NCBI GenBank assembly: GCA_002269645.1
Contig: NIVC01002556.1
Coordinates: 69,204 to 133,203, forward strand
Reading direction: 5' to 3'
Length of the DNA: 64,000 nucleotides
DNA from: Macrostomum lignano
Lineage: Eukaryota
Part shown: one piece after another, positions 1 through 53,169 of the stretch
Position numbering within the stretch: the stretch's first letter is position 1
Layout of the letters: every line of letters begins with the position of its first letter
The notes under the pieces: generated by a model
Database searches by the model: none
Told to the model about the DNA's origin: nothing
What the model saw: only the letters and a program-made list of their open reading frames with translations
Program-made: the position numbers and the translations under genes

Positions 1-436
1 ATAAAGCTAGATAGCTATAATAATGCTAAATAGCTATATCTCTAATAATTCTCTATTTCTCCTTTCTCCCTATCTACTCCTTTGCATCCGCCCCTTCCTC
101 TGCATCCGCCCCTTCCTCTGCATCCGTCCCTTCCTCTGCATCCATCCTTTCCTCTTCATCTGCCCCTTCCTCTGCATCCATTCCTTCCTCTGCATCCACC
201 CCTTCTGCATCCATCCCTTCCTCTTTATCCGTGCCTTCTTCTGCATCTAACCCTTCCTCTGTATCTACCCCTTCTTCTGCATCCACCCCTTCCTCTGCAT
301 CCATCCCTTCCTCTGCATCTGCCCCTTCCTCTGCATCCATCCCTTCCTCTGCATCCACCCCTTCTGCATCCATCCCTTCCTCTTTATCCGTGCCTTCTTC
401 TGCATCTAACCCTTTCTCTGTATCTATCCCTTCTTC
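1..436 (-). repeat. Left-arm copy of the 18-bp GATGCAGAGGAAGGG(N3) array (DAEEGx-encoding) plus its 3' flank, truncated at 436
   Basis: Reverse complement of 51577-51994; homology stops abruptly at 436 where unrelated sequence begins. Confidence 0.92.
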
Positions 437-2639
437 CAATGCGCGAAGCGCATTGGGTGGTCTGGCTTGTGACGAATATAATAATATGAGACGTGTGCAT
501 CGAAAAAATGACAAGAAAAATCTCACAAAAACTGCTGTAACTTCAAAACTACAAGTGCGAATTTCACAAGTGAGGTGTTATTTTAAAGAGAAGAATCTGA
601 TCTATTTAACGAGTATAGTTTTGTATGGATTCACTGCGGAGAAAAGGAACAGGCTTTAGTTGAAATGTTTGACTTAAGATTATGTCTTTACAAAAGTGCA
701 TTTCCTCATGCACATTAAAACTCGAGCTAAAAATGTTCGAGGGTTATAGGTGCGCCTTACTAAGATGCATAACATTATTGGGTTGTTTTTTTCAATTGTA
801 TCAAAAAGTTGGCACTTTGGTTGCAAAAAATGCAAAAATTGAAAATGTACTTTTACAGTTTTTTGCATTTTTTTCTATACTGCTAATAGTTAAGCATACA
901 TACTATGCACCAATTGATGCGCAATTCAAAGATACACAAGTGTGGAAGTTTTCAATTCTTAAACATTTGAAATCAGAAAGTTATCGACGAAAGACTAAAA
1001 ATCATGATCTCAAACTGATTTGAGGAAAAGTGCTCATTATAATTTTTGGAATATGGAAGAAACAATTCAACGCCGTCATCTAATTCCAAACTAACTGTAC
1101 TTTAAGGTACTGCGATGATTTTTTTATTGAAAGAGCGAAACCTGTTTAAATATTTGAAAAAATGGAAAAAAAGTACCTTTTTTCATAGAAATACACTCTT
1201 TTGACTGCTTAATCCGATTTCCAACAACAAAATAGTTGCTTTCCTGCTGGTGCAAACCGTTATTAGGGTGAATTTTCAAAATTGCATACTGTGCCAAAAG
1301 TAAACTGAAGCTTAATATTTATAAACATTAGAAACGGGACCACTAATGGGTATTTTACTTTGGTTACTTACTATGGACTAAACTGGCACTGGCAGAGACA
1401 GATTTGAGAGAAACTAATTGCTCCATTGTATTTGTATTTGGCTCCAGCGTTACAAATTACAATAGCTATTTCGGGGTCTAACCGGCTAAGTTATCAAAAA
1501 AGCTAGATACCAATCACCAGTTTCATCATCAGCTATACCTACCACGATTTTATAGTCACATGCAACAGTAATACCCTCCTTTAAAAGTTTTCAATATCTA
1601 AAATGATGTGTTAAATTTTATAAAATTTCATAAACAGTGAATTTTTAGCTGTTTACGTGCTGGTGGTTTGAACGTAGCTACTTTGTGCGAAAATACACTG
1701 TCATTAATACCGTACCTATTATTGTATTTATTGTATTGAAAGTTGATGTGTAAATTGTACTTTTCTATTTTTTTGTCATTCGTTATCGCACTCGGGCCGG
1801 CCTGCCTGCCTTGTGGGGTGTGGTGGCCTTGGCCACTTTCTCCCCCTTCTGCTAGGATCCAAAGCAAGCTTTCAAGTGTACATTTAATATTATCGATCGA
1901 TTATTTAAAACAAGCCTCTAGTGGCTGGTGTTGAGAGTGAGTGGCCTTGAGTGTACGCGAAAGCAAGAGGAAGCCCATGGGCGGACTATATGAACCTTCC
2001 TTTAGTGGAAAGTTGGGCCTTGTGCATTGCATAGTGTACGCTACACAAGACAGAAGGTAAAGAGAAAGAGAACGACAGGCTAGCCAATAGCGATAGCATG
2101 TGCTTCTTTCTCTCCAGTCCACTATGGTAGGGGGGGGGAGGGGGGTGTCAGACGGCCCAACTCTAACCCCCATACCCAAAACAGCGTACATGTAGAATAA
2201 GAAGGGATTGGGTCCAGATAAGTCTTCCCAAATGTACATGTATGTACAAAGACAAACACAGACAAGAAAAATGGCTCTAAAAACCATTGTTATTGTTACA
2301 CTGTGTGTCTATTTTTATTAACTTGACTTTGACTTGTCTTTACTCTAGCATGGTCAATGATAATTACTGTTACTTCATACCTAATTTACAATTAATTGCA
2401 TAAGATTAAGAAGGAATAATACAATCGAGGTCGAACCCATGATCACTTGACCCACCCACCCATGATCACTTCTGATTCTGACCTACATGTATCTACTATA
2501 TCCTGCCAGTTTCTCCAGTTTTATGGGTCTTGGTGTCGGTGATTCGAGCAATTCCATTACATTTTATCGGTGCAGTGCGTCTATTAATGCTTAGCTACTT
2601 GTATATGTGTTGCAGAACTTATGCTCGTAGTTTCCCTTC

Positions 2640-4040
2640 TAGGGATGTTGACCCCGGGAGTGCTCCCCGGGGAGCTTGTTGGGGAATACTCTCCGGGGAA
2701 TTTAACCGGGGACCCTGGGGAGAAAAAATATGAAAAAATGCATTTGTAACTTAATTTTTGCCATTAAAATAAGAAACTGATTCACAGAAGGCAGTGCTTA
2801 TCCCCACAGTACCGTAGGAATAATTTTTGTCTTATTCCAACGGTACCGTGCGAATAATTTTCTGCTTATCCGCACGGCACACTGACGAGATAGCTGCCCT
2901 ATCTTCTACATTTGCCGTTACATGGGAAGTTTAGTACATACGATTTGAGTGCAGTATAACAACATAACTTGGCTTGAACATTTGTTCTAAAGAAATAAAG
3001 ATTTAACGACTTTTCTATGAGCAAGAATTTTTTTGTGTAGTAACACGCATTTACACATGCATATACTAGTCTAGAACTGATTCGAGTTTATACATCAAGA
3101 TCAACAGCTTCTTAGTATCCTCAGTACAAATTCCCTTTCAATAAGCTATAAACTATTCACGCACAGCATATATATGTAGCAGATAGGGCAGCTAGTAAAG
3201 CAGAGGGAATAAAACAGGACGTGTAGGGCAGCTATCTTGTCAGTGTGCCGTGCGGATAAGCAGAAATTATTCGCACGGCATATGTAGAAGATAGGGCAGC
3301 TATCTCGTCAGTGTGCCGTGCGGATAAGCAGAAAATTATTCGCACGGTACCGTTGGAATAAGACAAAAATTATTCCTACGGTACCATGGGGATAAGCACT
3401 GCCTTCACAGAAAGCTGATTGAAACTCTGTCTATGCTCTTTTACCGCATAATTGCTTATTTCAATGCATTACACGTATTTGAAACACAACACACGTTTGA
3501 TTGTTTTTTCACTAATAAGTCATTCAATCAAGCAAATTGCACGTAGAAAAGAAACCCGTCAGGAAAAAGAAGCCTTACTGACTAGTGACTGCTGTGTTGG
3601 TCTGCGTTGACGGCTTGACGCAGGCGCAGCGCTGCGTCATGCGTCAGGCACTGACGCATAGGGGGGTGTCATACATATACTCCCTATTAGACAAGGACAA
3701 AATGGTGATTTACATATATATGCAAGAAATAAAATTCCGATTATAAAAACAGTCTCATTCATTAATTATCCTCTCACGAGCGTAGCTGTTTAGCATGCAT
3801 TCCAACAAATGCACTTTTCCGATAAAGGTGCGCGCACGATTTCGTGATGCCACATTGTCAAATACAGTTTAAAAAAACATTGTTTAAAATTTTTACCCCT
3901 GCGCCTTGAACATGTAGTACAAAGCTTAAATCAAAGTTTAAAAAATTCCACTTACAATCTAAGTGATCCGCCGTTTTTACTTATTTTTTCTTTTCACCGG
4001 GGTCCCCGATAAGATAATTCCCTGGGAATCGACATCCCTA
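2640..4040. mobile_element. Non-autonomous hAT-like DNA transposon
   Basis: Termini TAGGGATGTTGA at 2640 and TCGACATCCCTA ending at 4040. The 8-mer TTCCCTTC flanks both sides (2632-2639 and 4042-4049, one-base offset). No coding capacity seen. Confidence 0.7.
2790..3403. mobile_element. Mutator-like (MULE) MITE nested in the hAT-like element
   Basis: TIRs of roughly 120 bp starting GGCAGTGCTTATCCCC and ending GGGGATAAGCACTGCC; perfect 9-bp TSD TTCACAGAA at 2781-2789 and 3404-3412. Confidence 0.88.
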
Positions 4041-4845
4041 ATTCCCTTCCTATAAATCATTTGACGTTAGAGACATTTTACAACTCTCGCCCTACTTTAT
4101 CTATTAGGCTAACTTTATGTATGACACGACACAAAATATTAGGAGCATCAGCGTTAATAATGCCTTGAAAGTCTTTAAATAATCGATACAACACTAGGTA
4201 TTATAAAATTCCAACCCCAAAGCTCACTGGGGCGAAAAGACTTTGTCTTCATTAACTAGTTAAAATAAATTAAATAAATGCATACATAACGTCGACATAG
4301 CCATCATAACGACATAAGATAACCTCAAACCGAAGAAGTACACTGACGCGTCGTTCCATCTTACGACATTGCCTTTAAATTATACTTGTTTTTTTCTTAC
4401 TAGAACTCTAAATTTCAAAAAAGGAAACTTTCCAGAAGCACGCTTTCTCAATTAGAACTTTTCGAAGTGCAATAATAAATAATAATAGAACTTGTTTTTA
4501 AAGTAATTGCTAAATAATTGCTTTTTACGAAGTTTAAAAAAATCAAAAGTTTCTCTCTTTATTTGCAAAAGAAACTCTAATTCTGTTTATTTTGCTCTTT
4601 ACAGACCTTTTTTAGCATAGATGACTGATATTACACAGTAAATTTTAAAAAATACTGAAACGTTTGTTTGTTGCTTTAAAAATTCAAATGTGCCGGACTG
4701 ACTGAAAGCGGAGCGGCGAATCAAATAAGGAAAAGAGGCCTATTTAATTCAGCCTATTGTATGTTAATGAAGACGTCGCACTAAAATCTAAATACATAGG
4801 TTCTCTATTTTTGCCCTACTTTAACACTTGTATTCAACAATTGAA

Positions 4846-14043
<9,198 letters not shown>

Positions 14044-15813
14044 GCGATCAGGACGAGCCCAAGACTCGCACGCTGCAGGCCAAGTCCCACACTGAGCCTG
14101 CTTTCACCGCTTGAACCTAAACTCATCTGCCGATTTGCCCTATGAGCTACGATTTTTATGGATGGGCAATTTTTCGTCACGGATAGAAATAAGTGAAAAC
14201 ACTAGCCCTGTGCTTTGTATTAGTGATTGCATCACATAAATATTGTCGTTTCCGATCATTGCCTTTCCGCTCGCACCAATTTTCTGGCTGAATTTTCATA
14301 TTCCCCATTTGAATTGTTTTCAATTCGTGGTAGCAGCCAGATCTGAATCGTGTCATTATCATACCTTAATTCCACTATAACTCTAATCTTATCAGACATT
14401 TGCACCGCTTACACATCCAACTACTTGGTAATTTTTATTTTCAGTTATATAAAATTTACCGGTTATTTTCTAACTGTTTGCCAGCAAATATAGAAACGCT
14501 TTTTCTTTGATTGGTCCTGTTTTACAACTCTTTGAGTATCAAAATAGCAGTTGTTTGCTTAAGCAGCCTGTATCACATTGTTCCGAATTCTTTTTGGTAT
14601 GTTTTCTCACGAATAATAGCTGCCAGGTTTTTATTCTAATTCTTAACGAGAAAACCATGCACAGCAAGCAGTGGTCACGTTGAAACTTCAAAGACACCTG
14701 ACTTGGCCCGCTAGGAGCATCCTGACGTTCCTGTGGGAGGCTGTCCTGCGGGATTCGGCTAAGCGAGAGGCTGTGGTCGGGGCCGAGGAGCGCGATGTTG
14801 TCAGCATAGATCATTTTTACCCGTAGGTATGACTTCGGGAATATTACTGATGAAGATTAAAATGCCCTCAGCATAGGGAGTGAGTAGTTTTTATGAAGGG
14901 GCCTTTAGGACAGAATTCTTCACTGCCTGCATAGCGCCATTTATTGTATCTGTATTATTCGCAAAGAATCGACAACAAGAGGTGACTTGTTAGAGAATTC
15001 CAGCATAATACTTTTACCTGCTACCTTCTAAATCACCGATCAACCACTTTCAGGACATTTTTTCACAGCCACCAAAACACTATTAGTTCCATATTGTTAC
15101 CAGAGCAGGGTCCTCACTCCTTACCCTCTAAAATTACAATAAAAAGTTCCCAGTTCTCTCACCAGGTTTCTATTATAAACAGCACGACCCTAATTACAAA
15201 TCCAAATGCATCCAGTTCATGCAAAAATTCTGGCTCCAAGTAGAAAATAACGTTTCAAATATTAATCAGGCTCTCGCTCAAATCCCACAGTTTTCAACAG
15301 CATGAATTAATAAATAATGACAATGACAGCTACTATAACTGATAAAATTATAAGGCAGCTTCTGTCTTTACCAAGTGTAAGAACACTTGGTCCTATTACT
15401 TAAAAATATCCCTCTACTCGGAAATTCCGGGTCTGGCGTCCATGGCTGCCAGCTTGATTGAAGCTGATGCATTGATGAGGCGAGTCGATTGAAGACGATT
15501 CGACAACAGTGAATTTAAAAACAAACTAGCCTATTGTCTTGAACTGTTCTGATTAGTGATTATCCACTTCGTTAGATATTTAGGTTCTTGTTTATTTTTT
15601 AGAAAGCCAATCAATGACCGGTCATTAATTTGAAGTGACATTTCAAACAATGGTTCCCGAAATACTGGCTACAGAAAACCTGGCTTACAATGAAAGTGTT
15701 TTCGCACTTGCAGTGTTGATTGAGGCGGGCTGCACGCTATTAATCTGTAGAGTTAATCAATTTTTACGCTTCTGTTTGTGCTATGGAACCTGCGACCTAT
15801 CCAGTTTTCACAG

Positions 15814-17530: not shown

Positions 17531-17565
17531 GGCCAATTAATGCTACTCGGTTAGTTACTCGGTTA

Positions 17566-18323
17566 ACTAACTAACTAAAATAAGTAAAATCGGCGCCTCA
17601 GCCAAATGAATAGGCTCTTACGCCTCTAAGATAAATTAGTTTCCATATTAAGAGTGTACTCAGGTACACTAGTCTTCTAAATTAGGCTATAGGAGACTGT
17701 GACCAATCAAGCCGAGCAGGCGACACCAGTCGGGCTGAGGGGGGGGGGCTACCCCCAGCTGTCGGGGCGTCACACCTACTCCAGACACAATACTAAACCC
17801 CCCCCCCCGGGGCCAGCGAGGGTTCAGCGAACCAGTGAGGGAAGCCCGTGCCTTCTCCGGGTCAGTAGTGCCAAAAAATTGGTCATTTGACCAATGCCCC
17901 CACGGCCGTGGCTACCAGCCTGGGACTGCCCCCCCCCACTAACCCCGGGTACTCTTTGCCAAGACAGTCTCTTATCTTTGAAGCGGCAGGAGGGCTAATC
18001 GCCGGGACTATTTCACCCTTTGCTTCGCCAACCCGCCATTTTTATGGTTGCCGTGCCAACGGCCTCGTCCTGCTCAGACTCAGTCCTGGTTTTGGCACAC
18101 TCCAGCTTAAAGCTAGCCGTTCACCAGAGGACACTCCGAGGGAGACCGTCAGAGCATCAACTGGAACCGAGTATAGGCCTGCCTTCCTATACAGCTACCC
18201 ACAGCCCTTCCTGATCGACTATTACCCTCTAACCCAGCCTACTAACTCATTACAAGCTTTCAGCCAGGCAGAGACAAGTGTCACATGGGTACTGCGGTTC
18301 GGCGTCTCTATGCGAGACAAAAC
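17566..18323 (-). mobile_element. Non-LTR retroposon (SINE or 5'-truncated LINE 3' end) with (TTAG)n tail, left copy
   Basis: Perfect 18-bp direct repeats CGGTTAGTTACTCGGTTA at 17548-17565 and 18324-18341; ACTAACTAACTA tail next to the first copy. Confidence 0.8.
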
Positions 18324-20234: not shown

Positions 20235-20555
20235 ACTCACGCTGCCACACGGCCCAAAATGTTGCATCCCATTACGTGATTCAGAAATGTGCGAAGACAT
20301 AAACTGCGAGGGGTTGCGCAACCCCACATTAAACAGGCCGTCGAAGTCTCCGGACATGAACCCCATCGAGCATGTTTTCGTAAAGCGAAGAGTTCGGCAG
20401 GGTGCCTCGCAGAATGCTGAACAGTTGTGACTGGCGGTTCTGAATGCCCAGCAGCAGCTACCTAAAGTTCATTACCCGGCTGGTGATCAGTGATCAGGAT
20501 GCCACGATGAGTTATGGCATTTTTGCATGCTCGTGGTTCCTACACACGACAATGA
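20235..20555 (+). pseudogene. Tc1/mariner transposase C-terminal relic (mirror copy about 27218-27538, minus strand)
   Basis: RPSKSPDMNPIEHVF matches the Tc1 WPxxSPDLNPIE motif; the end resembles the MPRR..V..ARGGxTRY terminus, with stops and frameshifts. Confidence 0.75.
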
Positions 20556-21778: not shown

Positions 21779-22625
<847 letters not shown>

Positions 22626-22810
22626 NNNNNNNNNNNNNNNNNNNNNNNNNNNNNNNNNNNNNNNNNNNNNNNNNNNNNNNNNNNNNNNNNNNNNNNNNNN
22701 NNNNNNNNNNNNNNNNNNNNNNNNNNNNNNNNNNNNNNNNNNNNNNNNNNNNNNNNNNNNNNNNNNNNNNNNNNNNNNNNNNNNNNNNNNNNNNNNNNNN
22801 NNNNNNNNNN
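22626..22810. other. Assembly gap (185 N)
   Basis: Run of N from 22626 to 22810. Confidence 1.
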
Positions 22811-23289
<479 letters not shown>

Positions 23290-30206: not shown

Positions 30207-30241
30207 TAACCGAGTAACTAACCGAGTAGCATTAATTGGCC

Positions 30242-33761: not shown

Positions 33762-41041
<7,280 letters not shown>

Positions 41042-41174
41042 TTCAATTGTTGAATACAAGTGTTAAAGTAGGGCAAAAATAGAGAACCTATGTATTTAGA
41101 TTTTAGTGCGACGTCTTCATTAACATACAATTTAGGCTGAATTAAATAGGCCTCTTTTCCTTATTTGATTCGCC

Positions 41175-44100
41175 GGGTCGTTCTCAAAGCTAGGTCACAA
41201 CTTTTTGTTATTGCAAAAAAAGTTTATACATCGACCAATAATCGTACAAAAAAAATTCTTTCGACAATTTCTGTAAGAAGCTGCTACTAAAACCACAAGA
41301 AAACTTGAAATTGAGAAGAAATCAAGGCTATTTGTTATTCTTTGTTGCGGAAAATAAACGACAAAAATATTAAAGAGAAAATAAAATTTTCTTCCATTTT
41401 TATTTTAAATATGCAGTTCAATTTCTTTTGCAAAAATAAAAGAACAAGAAATTGACAAAGGAAATGTTTTTGAGCACAGCATTTTGTTACTCTGCTCTAA
41501 ATCCCAGACATTTAAAATTATCGTGTGCGAAAAAGTGCGAAATTATTATAACATGCACTCGAAAGAACTTCGATCAGTTTAACTAATCACTGAATTAAGA
41601 AGTCTAAATAAGTCTTGAAAGGTTGAATTAAAAATCAAGTTTTCACTATGTATCTTTTCAAAGGCAAGATGATTCGACAAATAAAGAATGTTCATTTTTA
41701 CCTTGAATAGAATTGTTCATTTTTACATTAAATATAATAAAATCTTACTAATAATAGAAAAAGTCAGGGAACTATCCTTGAACACCAAAAAGCACATTGT
41801 GGATTTAATATCGACTGCATGTTCCTTAATAAAGGAATTCGGATACTAGTATATATTTGATTATTTGTAGCATAATTTCTGAAAACTATAACTTGCTTGA
41901 TTTTACTTTAAGTACTCATTACATTAATACTTATACCAAAGCTACATGTACTTAAAATAAAAAATTATAGTTACTTATTAGACATTTTACTCCAATTAAC
42001 TTAAAATAATTCAAATTTATTTTAATTAATTCATTTTTTGAAACTTTTTGGAAAATAGACAAAATTGAATTATTTAATTACCAAAAACCTACTAGCTTAA
42101 CTAAAATAGCAATTAGTCTTTAAGAAAAGATTTCACTTGTTAATTGAGAAAAATGAGGATTGCGAGGTGTAAAAATGCGAAAGAGCATGCAGGAAACAGA
42201 GACAAACAAAAATGTAGGTAAAAGACACTGCACATGCACATAATATGATAACCAGACATAATGCGCACACTGAAACACCAGTAGCAATGACGCCCAAGCT
42301 TTTGATGATCACAAGCGAAAAGGCAAAACCCAGCCATCAATCAAAGAAGTAGACTTTAGCACGCATCTTGAGTGCATCACGCATTTTTTGCAGAGAAGCT
42401 CGAAAATTAACATTGTATTCTGTGCACAACCACCAACTGCGACAGGGTCTGCCGGGGGATTTGTGGGCACGCGGTCGCGGATACAAATCGGAGGAGTCGC
42501 TGACCATTCTGAAATTACAAGCTATATAGTACATGTAATTTTGTGTATTAATATATTTAGCCCGCTTTATTTCTATGCTCTCGTCCGCCTCTCGTTAATG
42601 CATCCCCAGACTCATGCAATAATCAAACTTATGATCGAACTATGCATGGCTTCCGTCCCTCGCTTTGAATCTCTCACCTCCCCATAGTTCCATCAACCTT
42701 ACCGTAGTGGCTTCCTATGCAAAAATCATCCCTCCGCATCTTACACAGGCTACTTCAGGCTGTAGACTGTACTACACTATTAATTAGTTGCGCTAAGGAA
42801 TCTACATGTATTTGCTCGCAGCGCAGCGCGCTGCTCAAATAAGGTTAGATCCATCTAGATATTCTAGTAATTTCAGGTTTGTCCATAGACTAGAGCTCAT
42901 GAGATGAGAATTCCATTAACTAGTACATTTAATATGAATGAACTGCGTGTGTGTGTGCTGTGCATACAATGTATAATATACGAGTAGTTTATGGGCCAAA
43001 TTATTGTGTGGCACAATTCTTGGCATCACTCAGCAGGCACAAGATGCAGTTAAGCAGCGCACGAAAATTCTACAAAAGAAATTGAGCCTGGTTGAGGTGA
43101 TGCGAGGAGGCAGATCCACACAATCTCAGTGAATACACCAGACTGCACCAGATACGAGTCCAGTCGAATGTGCGCACTGGTCTAAGCAGCACACGCATGT
43201 CCTCCTGACAATGACGGCACCTAGCTTCGTCCAAGCCTTTGCCAGCGTCACTGACAGACAGCGTCAATACTACCATGCAGTGCCACCTGCAGCACCGACA
43301 ACGGCAATTCCTCCAGTTAGCCCACAACAGTGGCTAAACTGAGGGACAGGGAACCTACCCGCAGAAGACACACACATACACACACAGCACCGGCAGCAGC
43401 ACTCTGACAGCATAACCTAAAGCTCCATGAGCTCAGTTTTCAAGCATTGAAGAAGCAGAAGCAGTCATCTTGAATCCAGGGATCAGGAAGAGTGTTGCAT
43501 GTCCGACATGTGCTGTTTCCGTGGCAAAAGGTGATGGAGCAAATTAATCAACACTTACTATCTAGCTCGTATTAAGACTAAAAAACTGAGGCAAGCTGGG
43601 ATTAAACCAAGGAAAATTTTTTACTATACTTTTTTACCATATCACTTGTTAATTTGTAAATTGTAAATAATTGCAATTGTTAATTGTAAATAGTGGTTAC
43701 TTTTATAGTATAGTAGAGAGGTACTCTATTTAAATGCAGTAAGAAGTGAAACAAATTTATATATTTAATTATTAAATTAAATTAATTCAAGGTAAATAAC
43801 TAATTTAACCAATTTATTAGGAGTATTTAATATTATAATAAATTGATTTTTATACCTTACACGGAATAAGCTCTACATTCATTTCTTAGCTTGGGGCCCA
43901 TCTGTATAAGGTCAGTTTCTTCAAAATGCTGATTAATTAATTAAGGCCTGTTGTCTTTACTTAAATTTATAAGGGCATCTTAGAAGTTAATATTACTATA
44001 TAATAACATGTATAATATTATTACTATATTATAATAATATAGTTGCAATTTTAATGACTATTGAATAAGTCTAAATGCTTCCCCTATTAACTTTAAATAT

Positions 44101-45024
44101 ATGGTATCTTTCCCTTCAGAAAAAATTAGCATAGAATGACTTGATGAAAACAAAAAAAAATCATTTCGAGATACACATTTGCTGATCATTCAGGTCAAAT
44201 TTCAAGGTCCAGTTTTGCAAATGTTTCTCTGTAGCTTGGTTACAAGGATTCTAATAAAAATATAATAAATATGTCCAATGAACTAACTGATACATAGCCA
44301 AATTGAAGTATTTTCAAAAACAAAAAAAATCATTTGCTCAGTTTACTTTACTGGATATCTGTGTAAAATTTCAGCTCAAAAGGTGCTCCATGGAGAATGC
44401 TAGTGTGGTTACAGGATATTTATTTTGTGCTTCAAAGTAGGAGTTTATTGCGATGCATGGTTGCTTTTAATTATTTTTATCAACAATAGTGCTCTATTTA
44501 ATAACAATTTTTTACAAAAAGATAATAAGACATGTTTTTCTAATTATCTGCATCAAAATGTATCATTTTAAGCGCACATTCTAGACGTCAGCTGAAAAAT
44601 ACATTTTGTGAGATGAGAAGAGGCTATCCCACCGGAAATGCTAGGCGTACAGTTAAGCGTCTATAAAATAATTTATAGTGCAGTTTATTAAGCTTTAAAA
44701 AATCTTAAATTAAATTTATATAAGCTTTCATTTTAAATGTAATATAGCAAGGTTTCAACACAACAACAACTTTTTTTAGCTACAGACATCTTGTAGTATC
44801 AAAAATTAACATCGGTGAAATGATTGAATTTAATTTTTTTCATCGCTAATTATCGCTTAATACCGCCAGATGATTAAAAACACTTTTGCATGATAAAGTT
44901 CAACCCAAAAATTATCTTTATTCACAGATAAAAGTGTCCTATTATTTTCAATATGGCAGTAACAATAGTAAATGTTCGGAAAATTGTTAAAATTTTTGCT
45001 CCTCCTAGAATTTGCGAACGACCC
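41175..45024. mobile_element. 3.85-kb TIR DNA transposon with 4-bp TSD (Sola2-like by termini and TSD; superfamily tentative), right arm only
   Basis: Starts GGGTCGTTCTCAAAGCTAGG and ends CCTAGAATTTGCGAACGACCC; CGCC duplicated at 41171-41174 and 45025-45028. The empty site is visible in the left arm at 4715-4718. Confidence 0.88.
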
Positions 45025-46176
45025 CGCCGCTCCGCTTTCAGTCAGTCCGGCACATTTGAATTTTTAAAGCAACAAACAAACGTTTCAGTATTTTTTAAAA
45101 TTTACTGTGTAATATCAGTCATCTATGCTAAAAAAGGTCTGTAAAGAGCAAAATAAACAGAATTAGAGTTTCTTTTGCAAATAAAGAGAGAAACTTTTGT
45201 TTTTTTAAACTTCGTAAAAAGCAATTATTTAGCAATTACTTTAAAAACAAGTTCTATTATTATTTATTATTGCACTTCGAAAAGTTCTAATTGAGAAAGC
45301 GTGCTTCTGGAAAGTTTCCTTTTTTGAAATTTAGAGTTCTAGTAAGAAAAAAACAAGTATAATTTAAAGGCAATGTCGTAAGATGGAACGACGCGTCAGT
45401 GTACTTCTTCGGTTTGAGGTTATCTTATGACTATGTCGTTATGATGGCTATGTCGACGTTATGTATGCATTTATTTAATTTATTTTAACTAGTAGGGCTT
45501 ATATAGTGTAAACATTTTTTTAGATATGAAGCTTTGTACCAGGCTGTAAAAGTAAATTGTAATGTTATATATACATTTGTAACAATATGGATTTTTGGTA
45601 GCCCTTTGTTTGACAAAATAAACTGCACCTTGTCCTTGCTTAGGCCTAGTGGATTTTTGGAAAATTAAAATGGATCTGCTAATGGTCTGTGTTTTAAATT
45701 GTTACTATTATTGTATTACATTGCTTATTGCTTTTAGTATTGGTAGTAGTCAATTAGGCTTATTTCCAATAGCCTAGAAGTTGGCCTTTCTAGTTAAATT
45801 TTAAAGGACATATTTTAGATAGGCTACCAATCAGTAATCACTTTGGTAACAGAACATTTTGGCAGCAATTTTAGGCAAGTTTGGCAAATCTCCAAATATA
45901 TAAATTATAGATTTAGCAAAAAATGTAGTTGTCACTTGGTTGCTTTAAATTTGAAATAAATTTCTATGTTGCAAATCAAAAACATTTGTTCATTATTAAA
46001 TAATTGCATAAATATTTGTTTAAAAGGTGGTTGAAGCAGAAAAATTTTGTTAAAAGGTTAGACAATTATTTCAAATATATGTTGTCAATTGGCTCTTTAT
46101 CAAATAGAGCCCAACTGGGATTAGAAAAATCTTGTTGGGCAAGATTGGATGGGATTGAATTTAGTGATAGATCCAA

Positions 46177-47917
46177 ATGTGAGGGTTTCCCGACAGATAT
46201 TCAGACAGATATTCAAAATGATCATCTACTACTTTTAACAAAATGGACCAAACGGAAACATATTTTTGGCAGATGTTTACGCATGTGTTTGCAATCAAAT
46301 GAGCCCAAATTTGTTTTATAAAATAAAAAAACTTTACAAAGTGCATTGTTTCAAAGATTGCTTGGCAACACCCTGATTCAGCATCTCTTCAACGTTTTCT
46401 GAAAATGATTCAATTTTTACATCCCATAAATGTGCCCCGTATCCCAAAAAGACATTGGACTAACTCTTATGCATGTTTCAGCTATAAAATGCCGCATCAC
46501 GCGTCTAATAAAATACTTTAATTCTTGAATTATTTTCTTTTAAAGTGTGCTTGGCAATTTGCTTTTTTGAAGGCAAGTCAAGAAACAGCACATATTTGCT
46601 GATGTCAGAACTCCATTTCGCTCTCAAATTAAATGAATTTATAGTTCCATTCTTACGCACATCCCAGCTTTAGAATGACACCATTGAAGCTGAAAAAGAA
46701 ACAGTATTTCCTGAGATATTCGACTCTAAAAAGTGCTTTGCTTTTGAGTCAATAACGCTTGACGTTTTATGTCGAAATATACACCAAGAAATTGTGACAC
46801 CATTTTTTGCTTATGAAATATAAAACTTAACTCACTCTTTTACGCATGTCCCAGCTTTAAAATGACACCTCAGGCGTCGCCAAAGACGCCACCGTTCGTG
46901 AGATATTCAACTCTAAACATTGCTCAGCGTGTACAGACATTCACCTTATAAATCAAATGTACTCCCAATCTTTGTGCACGTGCTCCACCTGTGTTTTTCA
47001 GTCAATTCCGATGAAATTTAACTTGCTCTTTTATGCACGTCCCAGCTTTAAAATGACACCTCAGGCGTTGCCAAAGACACCACCATTTGTGAGATATTCA
47101 ACTCGAAACATTGCTCGGCGTGTACAGACATTCACCTTGAGAAGTCAATTGCAGTCAATCTTGGCGAAACTTTAATGAAGATATTTGATTCGAAACATTG
47201 CTCGCCGTTTAGTTTGAGCCATTATAAACTTTTGACCAAAACAGTAAATTCTATTTTTCGATTTTTTGAATGGAGGCGAATCACCTGAATGATTGATAAT
47301 TTTCGACAGTAAACATAATAATATTATTACATAACATTATAACATATTAATAATACGAGCGACAGTGTCACATCATTATTCACTGACTTCCACTTAAATT
47401 TTGGCATACCTGCAATTAAAAGGGCTTTTAATAAATGATGCAGTTTTGTTTCGTAAGCAAAAAATGGTGTCACAATTTCTTGGCATATATTTCGACATAA
47501 AACGTCAAGCGTTATTGATTCAAAAGCAAAGCACACTTTAGAGTCGAATATCTCAGGAAATACTGTTTCTTTTTCAGCTTCAATGGTGTCATTCTAAAGC
47601 TGGGATGTGCGTAAGAATGGAACTATAAATTCATTTAATTTGAGAGCGAAATGGAGTTCTGACATCAGCAAATATGTGCTATTTCTTGACTTGCCTTCAA
47701 AAAAGCAAATTGCCAAGCACACTTTAAAAGAAAATAATTCAAGAATTAAAGTATTTTATTAGACACGTTATTTTATAAAACAAATTTGGGCTCATTTGAT
47801 TGCAAACACATGCGTAAACATCTGCCAAAAATATGTTTCCGTTTGGTCCATTTTGTTAAAAGTAGTAGATGATCGTTTTGAATATCTGTCTGAATATCTG
47901 TTGAGAAACCCTCACAT
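46177..47917. mobile_element. Foldback/Mutator-like non-autonomous element with long modular TIRs
   Basis: 46177-46325 pairs with about 47770-47917 and about 46490-46825 pairs with about 47440-47770. Internal repeats of about 190 bp (CCCAGCTTTA(G/A)AATGACACC). Perfect 9-bp TSD TAGATCCAA at 46168-46176 and 47918-47926. Confidence 0.85.
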
Positions 47918-48522
47918 TAGATCCAATTATTTGGATTTAGAATCTGAATCCAAAAAAAGTCTCTCTTTTTAAGAAATCCAAATGTTTTAGATTTGGAAAT
48001 TCTGTTTTTTTCTATTTCCTATTTTCTATTTCTATTTCTATTTGGAAATTCTATTTCCAAATTTCCAAATGTGCTTCCAAATATGAAAAAATCAATAAAA
48101 CAAAAAATTATGCAAAGATAAAAGAAATACAACTTTTGAAAAAAGAAAGTAAATTAAAAAATAAGAAAGCAAAATTTAATTTCATATTGTTCATTTTTAC
48201 AATTGTTTTTTTGCAATAACATATATTTTTAGTGTTATTAAGTAAAATTAATCAACTTTAGGACCTTTGAGGCATTCAATCTACGCTTGTAAAGTCACAG
48301 AAACATTTCTAGATAATCATTATTTAAGTGTAATAATTACTTTGTTTTTTTCAAAGTGCAAATATGGCGGATTTTATGTCTACTATACACAGTAAAGTTA
48401 TCAAATTGCATAAATGTAATATGAGTTAATATTAATAATTAGAATCAGTTAGATTAGATACTTGTATATAACAATTAAGTTCAATTCTAAGTTCAATTCA
48501 ATTTAGATACTAGATAGATATA

Positions 48523-50130
48523 ACAAGTATAACTTTATCCATCAACTTTTCTGTCAACTTTTCCGTTAACCTTTCTGTCAAGTATTCCATCAAATTTTCT
48601 GTCAACTTTTCCATTAACTATTCCATCAAGTACTCCATCAACTTTTCCATTAATTATTCCATCAACTTTTCCGTTAACTTTTCTGTTAAGTATTCTGTTA
48701 AATTTTTCCATTAACTCTTCTGTCAACATTTCCATTTACTACTCCATTAACTTTTCCACCAAATATCTCATCACTTTTCCATTAACTATTTTCATTAACT
48801 ATTGTGGTAATGCTATACAAAAATGGGATAAATAGAATACAACAAGGTATTCATTCTATGCTAGACTATTTGCTTTATTTAGTTTTAATAAGTAAATATC
48901 TATTGGACATAGGTCAGGCTACAATGACAGCTAAAGCATTCAGCATATAACATGGGTAGCAAGAGCTTGTGGCACCGGGGGCACATGCCCCCCCCCCAGA
49001 AAATAAGTCCATGCGGTAATTTTTAATGCTTTTTCTAATTTTAGGCCCTATTTAGCAGTTATAAAGGTACCTATGTGGGCTGTGCCTGTCGTCACCCCCT
49101 TGCCCTGTGCCTAGTGCCCCCCCCCTAAAATATTAGGCTCTGCCACCCCTGGCATTTAGCATCTATCTTCCTGTCTGGCTGTCCTTAAGCTAATAGTAGA
49201 CTCAAAGATCCCACCACACCTATTACAAATTACTACCAATAGGAAATGAATGAAATATATAGGTATAGGCTTATTATTATCTATTTAGACATTTAGAGCT
49301 ATGGCGATCTTGGTATGTGCGTGGCCATCTTAGGGCCTTTTCATATTGCTTGTTCTAGTTCCAGAACTAGAACCAATTTGTGAAGTATAACTTTTTGTCT
49401 CCATAACTAGAGGGAGATACGTGCTATAATTTTTTTATTATTGAAATGACAATCGCCAAGAAGAAAGTGAAAAATTGTGCTAAGTGAGGTTGTTAAGGCA
49501 GTCAAACATTCAACAGAATTAAATAGTTATATTGCTATTTTTCTTGGAAGATCTGAACCAATTCTGATTCTGGAATTGGTAATATGAAAAACCTATTAGT
49601 CATGCGCCACATGCAGTATGTAAAGTGACATGTCATACATAGGCCCTACAACTTATCCAATATTTAATTTAAGTGAAAAAGCAATATAGAAAAATGAAAA
49701 AAGACGCTTAGGATGCAAAAATGTTATTGAATATACTTTAACACTTATTTACTGAGACCATAGTATGCCAATGTCAAGTAAGTCCATTTTAATACATGCA
49801 TGTACACCTATGTATTTGTTTGTATAAAAGCCAAAAATGCCCAATAAATTTAAAATAATACAAATTTGAACTAAATTAACAATATTAATAATGTTACTTT
49901 AGTCACTTCCAAAGACTTAAATATGAAATACTACTATAGAATAAATAATAGTTTATGGAATAGTTAATGTAAAACTTGATGGAAAAGTTAAGGGAAAATT
50001 TAACGGAATAGTTGACGGAATAGTTGACAGAAAAGTTGATAGAATACTTGACAGAAAAGTTGACAGAATAGTTGATGGAATACTTGATGGAAAAGTTAAC
50101 GGAAAAGTTGATGGCCAAAGTTATACTCGT
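48523..50130. mobile_element. Non-autonomous TIR element with subterminal 12-bp tandem repeats
   Basis: Termini ACAAGTATAACTTT and AAAGTTATACTCGT; inverted arrays of (CCATC/CTGTC)AACTTTT-like units; 8-bp flank duplication TAGATATA at 48515-48522 and 50131-50138. Confidence 0.72.
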
Positions 50131-51099
50131 TAGATATAGTATAAGCCCAAGCTAGATTGAATTGTGTCAGTAAATTCATGTATAGCAGTAATAACAATTA
50201 CTAATTAGATGACAAGGCATTTTTTGTCACTAAAAAGGGTCATAGTTACTCCCCCTGTTTACCTTTTACTTTTTTTAAATTTGGAAACATTTGGATATTT
50301 GGATTTAGATTTTTTTGTACATTTGGATTCAGTTTTGGAAATTTGCACAAATCTACATTAGGTCCATCACTAATTGAATTTATAAAAGTTGGGACTCAGG
50401 ATTGGTCAAGATTGGGATCAAGGTCTACCATTGGCATCTAGGCTTATTTAGATATAGGATAGCTAAGGATGCATTTATTATAATATAAGCATATGTATTA
50501 GTCTTAATAGTCAAGTCACCCCAAGTGATATTACTACTACTATAGGCCCTATTTTATTACTATAACTTGTAGTTTAGTATAAGTTATTACTATTAGAGTA
50601 TAGAGCCCAGGTGCGAAAAATTGGGTGACAGATGGTTTTTATAATAAGGGCTAGGTCTATTAATTCATTTTTATTGGGAACCAAATTCAAATTTGCACAT
50701 TTTAAGTCTATAGGATTAGGCTCAAATTCCAAGCATGATATTTTGCACCTAATAGTCAAGTATAGGCCTTTTGTCTAGAATCCTAGACACTATGCCTTTT
50801 TTGAGGCAAAAGGTGGCATGATCCACCTATCTTTATCTCTTTGATTATCGACTGTTTTGCAAAATTCAGTTTGTTCTTGCACTTCATGGTAAGCCTAGAA
50901 TCAATTTGTGTGCATTTTAGACATGATGGGTCTAACAAAGTGTCAGAAGCATTATGTTATAACTTCATACCCTTTCCACGAAGTAAATAAATGATATGGC
51001 CTATATAGTGATCGCAATAAAGAGAAAGAGATATATCCATGCTTTGCATGCAGCATCCTGTTCATACTTCTATTGCTCAATTTTGATATTTATTTTTAG

Positions 51100-51921
51100 A
51101 AAGAGCAAATGGAAAGGAAGAAGTGGATGGAGAAAAAGAGGCGGATGCAGAGGAAGGGGCAGATGCAGAGGAAGGGTGGATGCAGAAGAAGGGTAGATGC
51201 AGAGGAAGGGTCAGATGCAGAGGAAGGGATGGATGCAGAAGAAAGGACAGATGCAGAGGAAGGGGCAGATGCAGAGGAAGGGGTAGATGCAGGAAAAGGG
51301 ACAGATGCAGAGGAAAGGGCAGATGCAGAGGAAGGGGTGGATGCAGAAGAAGGGGTAGATACAGAGGAAAGGATAGATGCAGAAGAAGGCACGGATAAAG
51401 AGGAAGGGATGGATGCAGAAGGGGTAGATGCAGAGGAAGTAATGGATGCAGAGGAAGGGATAGATGCAGAAGAAGGGACAGATGCAGAGGAAGGGATGGA
51501 TGCAGAGGAAGGGGCAGATGCAGAGGAAAGGATGGATGCAGAGGAAGGGGCAGATGCAGAGGAAGGGGTGGATGCAGAAGAAGGGATAGATACAGAGAAA
51601 GGGTTAGATGCAGAAGAAGGCACGGATAAAGAGGAAGGGATGGATGCAGAAGGGGTGGATGCAGAGGAAGGGATGGATGCAGAGGAAGGGGCAGATGCAG
51701 AGGAAGGGATGGATGCAGAGGAAGGGGTGGATGCAGAAGAAGGGGTAGATACAGAGGAAGGGTTAGATGCAGAAAAAGGCACGGATAAAGAGGAAGGGAT
51801 GGATGCAGAAGGGGTGGATGCAGAGGAAGGGATGGATGCAGAGGAAGGGGCAGATGAAGAGGAAAGGATGGATGCAGAGGAAGGGACGGATGCAGAGGAA
51901 GGGGCGGATGCAAAGGAGTAG
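51100..51921 (+). repeat. 18-bp (DAEEGx)n array; possible acidic terminal coding exon
   Basis: About 45 units; stop-free from about 51195 to TAG at 51919-51921; upstream TTTTTAG acceptor at 51099 and AATAAA at 51997. Two 1-G deletions near 51170-51195 break the frame. Confidence 0.75.
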
Positions 51922-53169
51922 ATAGGGAGAAAGGAGAAATAGAGAATTATTAGAGATATAGCTATTTAGCATTATTACAGCTATCTAGCTTTATAAAATA
52001 AAACTAGCTTTTTGATAATTTGACACTAAACACTATAATAATGAAATTTAGCTAATCAATTAATATACTTAGTAGTATCCATTTATTAGACTTATATTCT
52101 AATAGAAATATGTATGCATATATATAAAAATTGATATAGGTGCAGTCAATAAATGCCTAAATTCACATAAAAAAAACAATTTAAAACTTTAGTACCTACT
52201 ATCCAATCACAATGTGGACATGAAATTAAAAATATCTATTGCTTAAGTCCTAAATTCCAAGGACTTAAAAGTTCTTCTAACTTTGAAAAAATAATATTCA
52301 TTGATTTTTACTAATCTATTGCCAATAACTCAATGGTCCCAATGGTCTTTTAAGTCTCAAGTGAGTGGTATTACTAGATATGAAAACTAGATATAAGAAA
52401 TATGTTTTTGTTTCTATCAATATATATATATATATGCTTTGCTAAAAAACCTCAATATCTGTAACTTCTTGCAGCCATATTCCATATCTGTAGCTAAGCA
52501 GAACACTTTGTCAAGACCACTTGCTACTTTGTTGCTTTAATAGAACTCTAAAGCTCTTAAAGCAACCTGCATGATAAAGGGCTAATTACAAAGTATTTAA
52601 GTATGCATTTTGTTTGCCTATCTTTTTATATAATTGCTTTTTCCTATATATATCTACTGTAAGTATTATCTATACCATACTGGTGCTAACTAAGTATTTT
52701 GACATTTTGTAATAGCTATATATACATGATAAGAAAAGGTATAAAAAGAGATATAAAAGAGAGATTAGAATATTATCCTAACTATAAAATAAAGCTATAT
52801 AAAATATTGCTTACATACAACATTAATGTAATTACTGATAAAAATAAGTCAATTATTAATTTGAACATAGAGTCATAGAATATCAATATGTTATTTATAT
52901 TATAACATTCTAGTATTCTTAATAACTAGTATTTAATAATTATTAGTATTCTCAGTTTTCAGGTATGTTTTGCTTTGTATCTTATTTTAAATGCACAATC
53001 TGATTTCATGCTGTCTTCGTTGCTCCTTTCTGGCTTCGGAAGTGTAGACCAAAAAAATAATCCTTGCAAGTAAAAATTGCTGTTTTTTTCTTCAACTCTG
53101 TTCGCCATTTTTCATTATTGAGGACACTGACTTCTGCCTGATCTCCAGGGCGGAACCGCTGTTAATGCA

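What the first reader, a model, noticed from the sequence alone, without database searches (positions are those of the whole stretch)
1..51994. Gene-bearing palindrome of at least 52 kb with arms of at least 22 kb and a small spacer
Seen: the first 52 kb is an inverted duplication centred near 23.9 kb, and the left arm runs off the window. Two intact genes are mirrored (ADH> <CYP | CYP> <ADH). The arms differ by SNPs, small indels, one minisatellite unit and TE insertions, so this is not a fold-back copy of a single read. Known: large gene-bearing palindromes arise by breakage-fusion-bridge or fold-back repair and can be maintained by arm-to-arm gene conversion. Inference: either a real amplified locus or two haplotype/homeolog contigs joined tail-to-tail at the gap.
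Basis: partly seen in the sequence, partly recalled or inferred. Interest (0 to 1): 0.8.

Follow-up and report, generated by a model that had tools for sequence, protein, structure and literature searches.

The report
Probable mis-scaffolded haplotype contigs, not palindrome
The mirror-image duplication is really in the deposited sequence, but its two halves are separate assembly contigs of the flatworm Macrostomum lignano joined only by an unsequenced scaffolding gap, so it is most likely two versions of one locus stuck together tail-to-tail rather than a true genomic palindrome.

Summary
The window is M. lignano Mlig_3_7 scaffold NIVC01002556.1:69204-133203. The mirror image spans about 76 kb (scaffold 57252-133203) and also includes HMG-box, PSMA2 and DD3-3 upstream of the window. 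The interpretation as a palindrome is not supported by anything except a 185-N SSPACE mate-pair join. Window 1-22625 and 22811-64000 are two Canu contigs. Homology runs to the last base of the left contig. The right contig (41 kb) is entirely a second copy of the left contig's last 35 kb plus a 2.35-kb overhang. No arm/spacer boundary is seen on the left, and no outer boundary on the right. Both free contig ends show consensus-error bursts, and both lie in one degenerate LINE copy. The arms are genuinely different haplotypes: they carry TE insertions with target-site duplications, about 0.3% SNPs in the inner part, and about 0.01% in the outer 11 kb. The assembly is documented as highly redundant, with 159-330 of its 710 gap joins flagged by REAPR. 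My estimates: mis-scaffolded allelic or L1/L2 contigs about 0.75; a real young palindrome about 0.2. Only read-level data can decide. Interest is low.

The parts
1..22625 (.). Contig A. This is the terminal part of a longer Canu contig that continues about 69 kb upstream of the window. It forms the left 'arm'.
   Evidence: Only one N run is present. The window equals NIVC01002556.1:69204-133203. L003 and L005 show the contig continuing through HMG, PSMA2 and DD3-3 into SMAUG-like and TTL genes.
22626..22810 (.). Scaffolding gap of 185 N placed by SSPACE, with its length estimated from read pairs. It is the only link between the two arms.
   Evidence: Assembly method from PMC5730564. REAPR flagged 159 FCD errors plus 171 low-coverage cases among the 710 gaps.
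22811..64000 (.). Contig B, 41,190 bp, which ends at the scaffold end. It forms the right 'arm' plus a 2.35-kb overhang.
   Evidence: L002 is 100% identical to window 49916-64000 and ends at scaffold base 133203.
22811..25159 (-). The apparent spacer, which is really the overhang of contig B. It holds the rest of a degenerate LINE (endonuclease C-terminal part, RNase H, zinc-finger-like tail) and ends in a (TTAG)n array at 22814-23289.
   Evidence: Sequence reads. TRF. Frame-stitched translations hit Exo_endo_phos_2 at 30.3 bits (gathering score 27.4) and RNase_H at 24 bits (gathering score 25.8).
22240..22625 (+). 5' endonuclease part of the same LINE at the end of contig A. The last 726 bp of contig A carry 10 of the 14 one-bp indels found in the inner arms.
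   Evidence: The rate is 13.8 per kb against 0.29 per kb elsewhere (binomial p = 9e-11). The last true SNP is at 21344.
8227..22625 (.). Inner homologous block, left copy. It pairs with 39957-25160.
   Evidence: 45 SNPs (29 transitions, 16 transversions) and 26 indels.
25160..39957 (.). Inner homologous block, right copy.
4846..14043 (+). ADH class III gene, left copy. Exons: 4846-4851, 10474-10815, 11118-11519, 11877-12223, 14010-14043 (376 aa). Intron 1 holds the A-only LINE, and the last intron holds the 72-bp minisatellite.
   Evidence: Pfam ADH_N. tblastn. Model built with the g4 copy's annotated 376-aa ADH as a guide.
33762..41041 (-). ADH class III gene, right copy. The protein is identical to the left copy. 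Exons: 41041-41036, 37404-37063, 36760-36359, 36001-35655, 33795-33762.
15817..17530 (-). Cytochrome P450 gene, left copy.
   Evidence: Pfam p450. Residues 1-500 of paralogue P0128 align; the one stop lies in a short intron.
30242..31955 (+). Cytochrome P450 gene, right copy. It differs from the left copy by one substitution.
12357..13775 (.). 72-bp minisatellite, 19.7 units, in the left arm.
   Evidence: TRF.
34030..35521 (.). 72-bp minisatellite, 20.7 units, in the right arm.
   Evidence: TRF.
5076..8226 (-). Non-LTR retrotransposon (SAP-domain ORF plus reverse transcriptase) found only in arm A. It replaces 854 bp that arm B (39958-40811) shares with the outgroup copy.
   Evidence: Pfam RVT_1 and SAP. 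Junctions. Outgroup comparison.
41176..45024 (.). DNA transposon of 3,849 bp found only in arm B. TIRs are GGGTCGTTC...GAACGACCC and the TSD is GGCG. The site is empty in arm A and in the outgroup copy.
39059..39363 (.). MITE of about 297 bp plus TSD, found only in arm B. TIR is CATACATGCGCAAC and the 8-bp TSD is GTCATTAT.
437..4254 (.). Arm-A-specific TE-derived block. It replaces about 1.7 kb of ancestral sequence that arm B and the outgroup retain.
45494..51576 (.). The arm-B counterpart of that block. It keeps ancestral backbone pieces (50610-50373, 46161-45494) interrupted by about 4.2 kb of B-only insertions.
51577..64000 (+). Outer, nearly identical block: 18-bp satellite, HMG-box gene (53170-56284), PSMA2 (57844-59050) and DD3-3 (59916-62931). 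It is mirrored upstream of the window.
   Evidence: 13 substitutions in 12.2 kb, with only one between 52768 and 63765. An error burst occupies the last 1 kb. The PSMA2 protein is identical in both arms: PAA56933.1 = PAA56939.1.

Best explanation
The 'palindrome' is most likely a scaffolding artefact, a false (heterotype) duplication in inverted orientation.

Contig A and contig B are two assembled versions of the same M. lignano DV1 locus. They are either the L1 and L2 copies of the large chromosome in a tract where those copies are unusually similar, or two alleles of one subgenome. They differ mainly in a 12-kb TE-rich stretch between HMG and ADH.

Canu resolved that heterozygous stretch into two paths. 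Contig A comes in from the outer flank, runs through haplotype 1 and dies out about 1.3 kb after the haplotypes converge. Contig B is built from reads anchored in haplotype 2. It overlaps the shared outer flank by about 11-12 kb, roughly one read length, and runs on through the inner flank until it breaks in a (TTAG)n array.

SSPACE then joined the end of A to the (TTAG)n end of B across an estimated 185-bp gap, which produced a mirror image.

What is shown: the contig structure, the containment of B within A's range, the contig-end error signatures, the genuine haplotype differences, and the assembly's documented error rates. What is inferred: that the join is wrong, and why. One possible cause is read pairs with same-strand geometry treated as opposite-strand, which would join exactly this kind of short-overhang allelic pair with a near-zero gap estimate. 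That mechanism is untested.
For: (1) The two arms are joined only by the N run. Mlig_3_7 was built from Canu contigs scaffolded with SSPACE using Illumina and 454 pairs.

(2) Homology runs to the very last base of contig A (22625 pairs with 25160), and B simply continues the same LINE. No left arm/spacer boundary is seen.

(3) Contig B is only 41.2 kb and ends at the scaffold end about 1 kb after DD3-3. Contig A continues collinearly into SMAUG-like and TTL genes, in the same order as on the independent copy NIVC01000543.1. B is therefore contained in A's range except for a 2.35-kb overhang.

(4) Both free ends show consensus noise. Ten of 14 one-bp indels fall in A's last 726 bp (p = 9e-11), and a similar burst occupies B's last 1 kb. 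The 11 kb before B's end has a single substitution. This is the pattern of read-length overhangs of a haplotype bubble.

(5) The arms are distinct haplotypes, each with its own derived TE insertions that have TSDs and empty sites, polarised against the outgroup copy.

(6) Only three annotated copies of the locus exist in the assembly: the two arms and one on NIVC01000543.1. The genome is reported to be about 85% three-copy (PMC10733133).

(7) Published error rates are high. Redundant blocks total 180-312 Mb. REAPR scores only 64% of bases as error-free. Of 710 gaps, 159 have FCD errors and 171 have low fragment coverage. 36% of assembly length lies in S/L chimeric scaffolds, and L1/L2 chimerism was not assessed. 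93% of read pairs multi-map.

(8) An assembly gap between a duplicated pair on one scaffold is a listed hallmark of false duplications, and was not found for true ones (PMC9516828).
Against: (a) Normal opposite-strand read pairs from an allelic overlap would not support a tail-to-tail join. An inverted SSPACE join needs same-strand pairs, so either a real inverted junction exists or some library or processing error occurred. I could not check this.

(b) The arms differ by only 0-0.3% in substitutions, well below the reported L1-L2 mean of 1.91%. They are therefore not a typical L1/L2 pair, and the 'three copies = S+L1+L2' argument is weakened. Only two diverged lineages are seen: the arms together, and g4.

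(c) A real young palindrome would give the same contig pattern, because Canu would break at a fork between near-identical arms.

(d) No read depth, spanning reads or other assembly could be examined.
Confidence: 0.75

Rival explanations
1. A real, evolutionarily young inverted duplication (palindrome) on one M. lignano chromosome. Its arms would be at least 35-39 kb, with an asymmetric spacer of about 2.5 kb. It could have formed by a fold-back or template-switch event whose junction lies inside a LINE element, hidden in the 185-bp gap. Later TE insertions would have modified the arms, and arm-to-arm gene conversion could have homogenised the outer 11 kb.
For: SSPACE made an inverted join with a small gap estimate, which for correctly specified libraries requires several same-strand read pairs (the rest is inference). 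The arms are much closer to each other (0-0.3%) than the reported L1-L2 average of 1.91%, as expected for a recent duplication. An asymmetric short spacer is typical of fold-back inverted duplications (general knowledge). M. lignano DV1 has an unstable, recently polyploid karyotype.
Against: No sequenced molecule crosses the centre. 130x PacBio coverage did not bridge a putative 185-bp gap. No inner boundary is seen on the left arm and no outer boundary on the right. The right arm ends with its contig inside a region identical to the left arm. At least five large TE or structural differences sit within 12 kb alongside about 0% SNPs in the alignable parts, which would need both rapid TE activity and selective conversion. 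Between 22% and 46% of gap joins in this assembly are flagged by REAPR. No fourth copy is annotated, although one would be expected if another homologue carries the locus as well, unless copies are collapsed.
Confidence: 0.2
2. Both copies are real and lie on one chromosome, but not as drawn. They could be a direct or dispersed segmental duplication, with the scaffolder choosing the wrong partner end or orientation.
For: The same low divergence would fit a recent duplication. The scaffolder's error rate is high.
Against: No arm-specific flank is seen at either end. Contig B never leaves the range of contig A except to continue the same LINE. Nothing in the sequence calls for a second locus.
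Confidence: 0.05

Closest known systems
False heterotype duplications (haplotigs retained and scaffolded next to their partner), as characterised by Ko et al. 2022 (PMC9516828) and targeted by purge_dups (PMC7203741)
   Same: Two near-identical copies sit on one scaffold, separated by an assembly gap. The copies differ by genuine heterozygous variants. One copy is a short contig contained within the range of the other. Contig ends carry excess consensus errors. Genes appear falsely doubled (ADH, CYP, HMG-box, PSMA2, DD3-3).
   Different: The orientation here is inverted rather than tandem, which ordinary read-pair logic does not readily produce. The read-depth, discordant-pair and k-mer criteria could not be tested.
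L1/L2 haplovariants of the large chromosome MLI1 in M. lignano DV1, and their mis-expansion or collapse in Mlig_3_7 (PMC10733133)
   Same: The assembly and line are the same. Three copies of the locus are present in the assembly. Indel-length differences are very large (about 40% here, against 32-36% reported) and caused by TEs. The authors explicitly report wrongly expanded allelic variants, mostly between L1 and L2, and say L1/L2 chimerism was not assessed.
   Different: Substitution divergence between the arms (0-0.3%) is far below the reported L1-L2 mean (1.91%). The three copies are not equidistant as the genome-wide pattern would suggest.
Gene-bearing palindromes of primate sex chromosomes, such as human Y P1-P8 (from my own knowledge, not checked here)
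   Same: Mirrored arms tens of kilobases long carry intact genes. A short unique centre is present. Long tracts have about 99.99% arm-to-arm identity.
   Different: Those palindromes are shown by contiguous sequence through the spacer and have defined inner and outer boundaries. Here the centre is an N gap, boundaries are unobserved, and a 12-kb stretch of the arms is structurally different.
Fold-back or breakage-fusion-bridge inverted duplications with a short asymmetric spacer (from my own knowledge)
   Same: The geometry matches: one arm extends about 2.5 kb further than the other before the turn.
   Different: No junction sequence, copy-number step or terminal deletion is available. The arms are not identical, as they would be just after such an event.

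Membership tests
False heterotype duplication (criteria of PMC9516828) | Assembly gap between the duplicated pair on the same scaffold | tested here: met
   The only N run (22626-22810) lies exactly between the arms. Homology reaches the last base before it.
False heterotype duplication (criteria of PMC9516828) | The copies differ by genuine heterozygous variants or haplotype-specific sequence | tested here: met
   58 substitutions with a transition:transversion ratio of about 1.8. TE insertions have TSDs and empty sites, polarised against an outgroup copy. Read k-mer multiplicity itself was not testable.
False heterotype duplication (criteria of PMC9516828) | About half the normal read depth over each copy | not testable with these tools
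   No reads are available.
False heterotype duplication (criteria of PMC9516828) | Discordant read pairs or no long reads across the join | not testable with these tools
   No reads are available. Indirect evidence only: Canu did not bridge the join with 130x PacBio coverage, and REAPR flags 159-330 of 710 gaps assembly-wide.
False heterotype duplication (criteria of PMC9516828) | One copy is a short contig that overlaps, or is contained in, the partner contig's range | tested here: met
   Contig B (41.2 kb) maps collinearly onto scaffold 57252-91828 of contig A, with a 2.35-kb overhang. A continues beyond B's outer end.
Genomic palindrome (sex-chromosome type) | Both arms lie on one DNA molecule, shown by contiguous sequence through the centre | tested here: not met
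   The centre is an unsequenced SSPACE gap.
Genomic palindrome (sex-chromosome type) | Defined inner boundaries where each arm gives way to a unique spacer | tested here: not met
   The left arm ends with its contig while still homologous. The 'spacer' is contiguous with the right arm only.
Genomic palindrome (sex-chromosome type) | Defined outer boundaries with different flanks on the two sides | tested here: not met
   The right arm ends with the scaffold inside near-identical sequence. Only the left side has a flank.
Genomic palindrome (sex-chromosome type) | Very high arm-to-arm identity maintained along the arms | tested here: inconclusive
   About 99.99% over the outer 11 kb and 99.7% over the inner 14 kb. 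About 12 kb in between is structurally different.
Fold-back / BFB inverted duplication | A sequenced fold-back junction and a copy-number step | not testable with these tools
   Any junction would lie inside the N gap. No depth data are available.

The most novel reading that the evidence does not exclude
The SSPACE join is correct, and M. lignano DV1 carries a real, young, gene-bearing palindrome. It would have arms of at least 35 kb, an asymmetric spacer of about 2.5 kb, and a turn inside a LINE element. It would duplicate ADH3, a CYP, an HMG-box gene, PSMA2 and DD3-3. Its outer part would be homogenised by arm-to-arm conversion while TE insertions erode the middle. That would be an autosomal palindrome caught early in a neopolyploid with an unstable karyotype.
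Probability: 0.2. Interest if true: 0.5.

Novelty: not a real feature. Interest (0 to 1): 0.12.

Why it matters
If the structure is an artefact, which is the likely case, it matters in practice. Five genes on NIVC01002556.1 (ADH3, CYP, HMG-box, PSMA2, DD3-3) are counted twice in the deposited annotation; for example PAA56933.1 = PAA56939.1, and DD3-3 appears as g1 and g2. The scaffold should be split at base 91829-92013 before any analysis of gene copy number, subgenomes or structural variants. The case also illustrates a class of inverted false duplications in polyploid or heterozygous draft assemblies that can look like biologically interesting palindromes. The two contigs remain useful as a pair of haplotypes showing recent TE insertion polymorphism in M. 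lignano. If the structure is real, it would be a rare autosomal gene-bearing palindrome in a flatworm, but nothing in the sequence itself requires that.

Tried and rejected
(1) Chance or low-complexity explanation for the mirror: rejected.

(2) Single-read fold-back (missed SMRTbell adapter) artefact: rejected, because the arms carry independent TE insertions with TSDs.

(3) Homeolog (S versus L) contigs: rejected for the arm pair. The independent copy g4 is about 2% diverged in genes and 12-20% in intergenic DNA from both arms, while the arms differ from each other by 0-0.3%.

(4) Early inference that the organism was a different Macrostomum species (74% and 87% protein hits): wrong. Those hits were a paralogue and an ORF-versus-spliced-protein effect. 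One search shows 100% DNA identity to Mlig_3_7.

(5) Early inference of a fourth copy from the name 'g4': wrong. 'Mlig012640g3' is PSMA2 on the same 545-kb scaffold.

(6) Third homologue search on an ADH exon with a 1e-60 cut-off returned only a fish protein, so that search was wasted.

(7) Six guessed ORFs looked up to find annotated proteins in the inner region: none is in the collection.

What follows CYP, the LINE and (TTAG)n on NIVC01000543.1 therefore remains unknown. This would have been the best comparative test.

(9) L004, L006 and L007 never reached the Python sandbox. Repeating the P0125 look-up did not help and cost one look-up. I worked around this with DNA alignment and by pasting 4.3 kb from get_sequence.

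(10) The supplements of both M. lignano papers hold no per-scaffold coverage or classification tables and no SSPACE library orientations.

(11) A Pfam call with a wrong frame failed and was repeated.
Full report
**What is in the window.** The window has a single N run, 22626-22810 (185 N). It therefore consists of two sequenced pieces: contig A (1-22625) and contig B (22811-64000). Self-BLAST and a MAFFT global alignment confirm a strong inverted duplication. Window 8227-22625 pairs with 39957-25160. Further collinear anchors are 4255-4718 with 45493-45025, 4714-5075 with 41175-40812, and 1-436 with 51994-51577. ADH (class III) and a cytochrome P450 are mirrored as ADH> <CYP | CYP> <ADH (Pfam; tblastn).

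**Where the window comes from.** The closest database proteins were from Macrostomum lignano. The locus fetched for the DD3-3 hit (L002, GCA_002269645.1, NIVC01002556.1:119119-133203) is 100% identical over 14,085 nt to window 49916-64000. The window is therefore Mlig_3_7 scaffold NIVC01002556.1, bases 69204-133203, and the window's right end is the end of the scaffold. According to the assembly paper (PMC5730564), Mlig_3_7 consists of Canu v1.4 contigs from PacBio reads, polished with Pilon and then scaffolded with SSPACE v3.0 using Illumina and 454 paired-end and mate-pair data. The 185-N run is an SSPACE join whose length was estimated from read pairs.

**The gap test requested by the scan program.**
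- The last bases of contig A (...TTCGTTTCCGCCTACCTGGATATCCT) are matched base for base by the reverse complement of contig B up to 25160. B then simply continues (GGAGACGTCCCTCC...).
- That continuing sequence is a degenerate non-LTR retrotransposon. My frame-stitched translations hit the LINE endonuclease family Exo_endo_phos_2 (30.3 bits, gathering score 27.4). RNase H follows at 24 bits, just under its cut-off of 25.8. The element runs into the (TTAG)n array at 22814-23289, with which contig B begins.
- The letters on the two sides of the gap are therefore not continuous in any ordinary sense. The left flank is the sense strand of the LINE's 5' part, and the right flank is the reverse complement of the same element's 3' microsatellite end.
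- Either a fold-back junction is hidden in the gap, or the join is wrong.
- The 'small spacer' (22626-25159) is seen only as part of contig B. No left arm/spacer boundary is observed, because contig A ends while still homologous.

**How far the mirror extends.**
- The DD3-3 cluster contains a second protein on the same 133,203-bp scaffold (PAA56932.1, against PAA56940.1 in the window).
- Its locus (L003, scaffold 48325-71334) shows HMG-box, PSMA2 and DD3-3 upstream of the window in mirror orientation. SMAUG-like and TTL genes follow.
- I reconstructed the spliced PSMA2 protein (241 aa). It is identical in both arms and corresponds to PAA56933.1 and PAA56939.1. Exactly two places encode it, both on this scaffold.
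- The mirrored structure runs from scaffold 57252 to 133203, about 76 kb.
- It is asymmetric. Contig A carries on past DD3-3 into SMAUG-like and TTL, in the same order as on an independent copy of the locus on NIVC01000543.1. Contig B ends about 1 kb after DD3-3, at the scaffold end.
- Contig B (41.2 kb) is therefore contained within the range of contig A, apart from its 2.35-kb overhang at the centre.

**How the arms differ.**
- Inner block: 45 substitutions in about 14.1 kb (29 transitions, 16 transversions; 0.28% outside the minisatellite) and 26 indels. The last substitution is at 21344.
- End of contig A: 10 of the 14 one-bp indels fall in its last 726 bp. That is 13.8 per kb against 0.29 per kb elsewhere (binomial p = 9e-11).
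- Outer block (51577-64000): 13 substitutions. Seven lie next to the satellite (51775-52767), one at 55232 and none from 55233 to 63765. A garbled GC run and several 1-bp indels fill the last 1 kb of contig B.
- Both free contig ends thus show the indel-dominated noise of thinly supported PacBio consensus. Over about 11 kb the two 'arms' are essentially the same sequence.
- Real divergence is concentrated in a TE-rich stretch between HMG and ADH.
- Arm B alone has a 3,849-bp DNA transposon (41176-45024; TIRs GGGTCGTTC/GAACGACCC; TSD GGCG) and a roughly 297-bp MITE (39059-39363; 8-bp TSD GTCATTAT).
- Arm A alone has a 3.15-kb LINE with SAP and RT domains (5076-8226) and a 3.8-kb block (437-4254).
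- I used 4.3 kb of the third copy as an outgroup. Arm B keeps the ancestral backbone with added insertions. Arm A has replaced about 1.7 kb and 0.85 kb of ancestral sequence with TE material.
- ADH3 is identical in both arms (376 aa; exons 4846-4851, 10474-10815, 11118-11519, 11877-12223, 14010-14043). The CYP differs by one substitution.

**Genomic context from the literature.**
- DV1 worms carry three subgenomes: S, plus two differing copies (L1, L2) of the large chromosome (PMC10733133).
- About 70% of Mlig_3_7 by length, and about 85% by coverage, is present in three copies.
- SNP divergence is 2.41% for L-S and 1.91% for L1-L2. Indel-length divergence is 32-36%.
- 93% of read pairs multi-map.
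- 36% of assembly length lies in S/L chimeric scaffolds, and L1/L2 chimerism could not be assessed.
- Wrongly expanded or collapsed allelic variants are common, mostly between L1 and L2.
- The assembly paper reports 180-312 Mb of redundant blocks and 63.95% REAPR error-free bases. [quoted passage not shown]
- Ko et al. 2022 (PMC9516828) list the hallmarks of false duplications: half depth, an assembly gap between the pair on one scaffold, discordant pairs and haplotype-specific k-mers. They note that true duplications lacked these properties.

**Interpretation.** The most economical reading is a heterozygous bubble resolved into two crossed contigs.
- Contig A enters from the shared outer flank, runs through haplotype 1 and peters out about 1.3 kb after the haplotypes reconverge.
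- Contig B is built from reads anchored in haplotype 2's TE-rich core. It overlaps the shared outer flank by about one read length and continues through the shared inner flank, until it breaks in a microsatellite.
- SSPACE then joined the end of A to the microsatellite end of B.
- This explains why homology reaches the last base of A, why B is contained in A's range, why both ends are ragged, why 11 kb are virtually identical, and why only three annotated copies of the locus exist.

I put this reading at about 0.75.

**What argues the other way.**
- Ordinary opposite-strand read pairs from an allelic overlap imply A followed by reverse-complemented B with a huge negative gap. SSPACE would discard such pairs. 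An inverted join needs same-strand pairs.
- That favours a real junction, unless a library was mis-oriented. 454 circularisation pairs are natively same-strand.
- If such pairs were treated as opposite-strand, they would join exactly this kind of pair, with a gap estimate of 2d - 2349, which is near zero (d = distance of the second read beyond contig A's end; 2349 = length of contig B's overhang). This is my inference and is untested.
- The arms are also much more alike (0-0.3%) than the average L1-L2 pair (1.91%). They are either an atypically similar L1/L2 tract, two alleles of one subgenome, or a young real duplication.
- A real young palindrome would also make Canu break near the turn.

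I therefore keep a real palindrome at about 0.2, and other arrangements at about 0.05.

**What could not be done.** No reads, read depth or alternative assembly were accessible. The inner part of the third copy, which would show what normally follows CYP, the LINE and (TTAG)n, could not be fetched.

**Verdict.** The mirror image is real in the record, but there is no evidence that it exists in the genome. It should be treated as a probable inverted false duplication at an SSPACE gap. Interest is low. The decisive tests are simple read-mapping, depth and PCR checks.

Noticed in passing
window 4846-14043 (left) and 41041-33762 (right): The ADH class III gene has a 6-nt first exon (ATGGAA). Intron 1 is 5.6 kb in arm A (containing the A-only LINE) and 3.6 kb in arm B. 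The whole 72-bp minisatellite sits in the last intron. An ADH exon search found no M. lignano hit in the protein collection, although the copy on NIVC01000543.1 is annotated as 376 aa.
   Followed up: partly
window 12357-13775 and 34030-35521: The 72-bp minisatellite is open in several frames on both strands, giving spurious ORFs of up to 551 aa. Any ORF-based scan would flag these as genes.
   Followed up: no
window 21900-22625 and 62998-64000: Both contig ends carry bursts of 1-bp indels, and a scrambled GC run lies at 63766-63770, relative to the other copy. This suggests unpolished consensus at the ends of Canu contigs in this assembly. CDS calls near contig ends may be frameshifted.
   Followed up: yes
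window 15817-17530 and 30242-31955: The CYP gene appears intact in both arms, but an exon-2 search found no matching protein in the collection, so it appears unannotated. Its nearest annotated relative (74% DNA identity) is the Mlig006662 family, listed as g1-g3 on three scaffolds.
   Followed up: partly
window 78-436 and 51099-51994; L007 (g4) about 3200-3350: An 18-bp satellite (GGATGCAGAGGAAGGGAT)n lies between HMG and ADH in both arms, with different array lengths. BLAST found no counterpart in the g4 copy, which has an (AT)-rich simple repeat in roughly that interval.
   Followed up: partly
window 60461-60986 and 62240-62404; L004 10001-13000: Two intronic tandem repeats in DD3-3 differ strongly between the arm copies and the g4 copy. 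The 29-bp repeat is longer in the arms, and the 37-bp repeat is greatly expanded in g4. The two arms are identical to each other over this 3 kb.
   Followed up: partly
window 3866-4256; L007 1-405: A TE end (GGGCGAAAAGACTTTGTCTTCATTAA...) at the edge of the arm-A-specific block has a 91.6% identical copy inside ADH intron 1 of the g4 locus, at a different position and orientation. This suggests a recently active family that inserts around this gene.
   Followed up: no
window 49333-49593; L001 1463-1720: A 261-bp repeat shares 86.6% identity with a sequence on an unrelated scaffold (NIVC01001281.1). It lies among short inverted tandem repeats at 48515-50138.
   Followed up: no
L007 / L004 versus window 40607-53191: Intergenic DNA of the g4 copy is only 80-88% identical to the arms (BLAST identity including gaps). 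Divergence across the mostly genic 3-kb DD3-3 region is 2.06%. This is much higher than the genome-wide 2.2-2.4% SNP figure published for paralogous copies.
   Followed up: no
window 4210-47843: Protein accession numbering (PAA56934 for left HMG, PAA56938 for right HMG) implies three annotated proteins between the two HMG genes. They are probably the two ADH copies plus one other. I could not identify them.
   Followed up: partly
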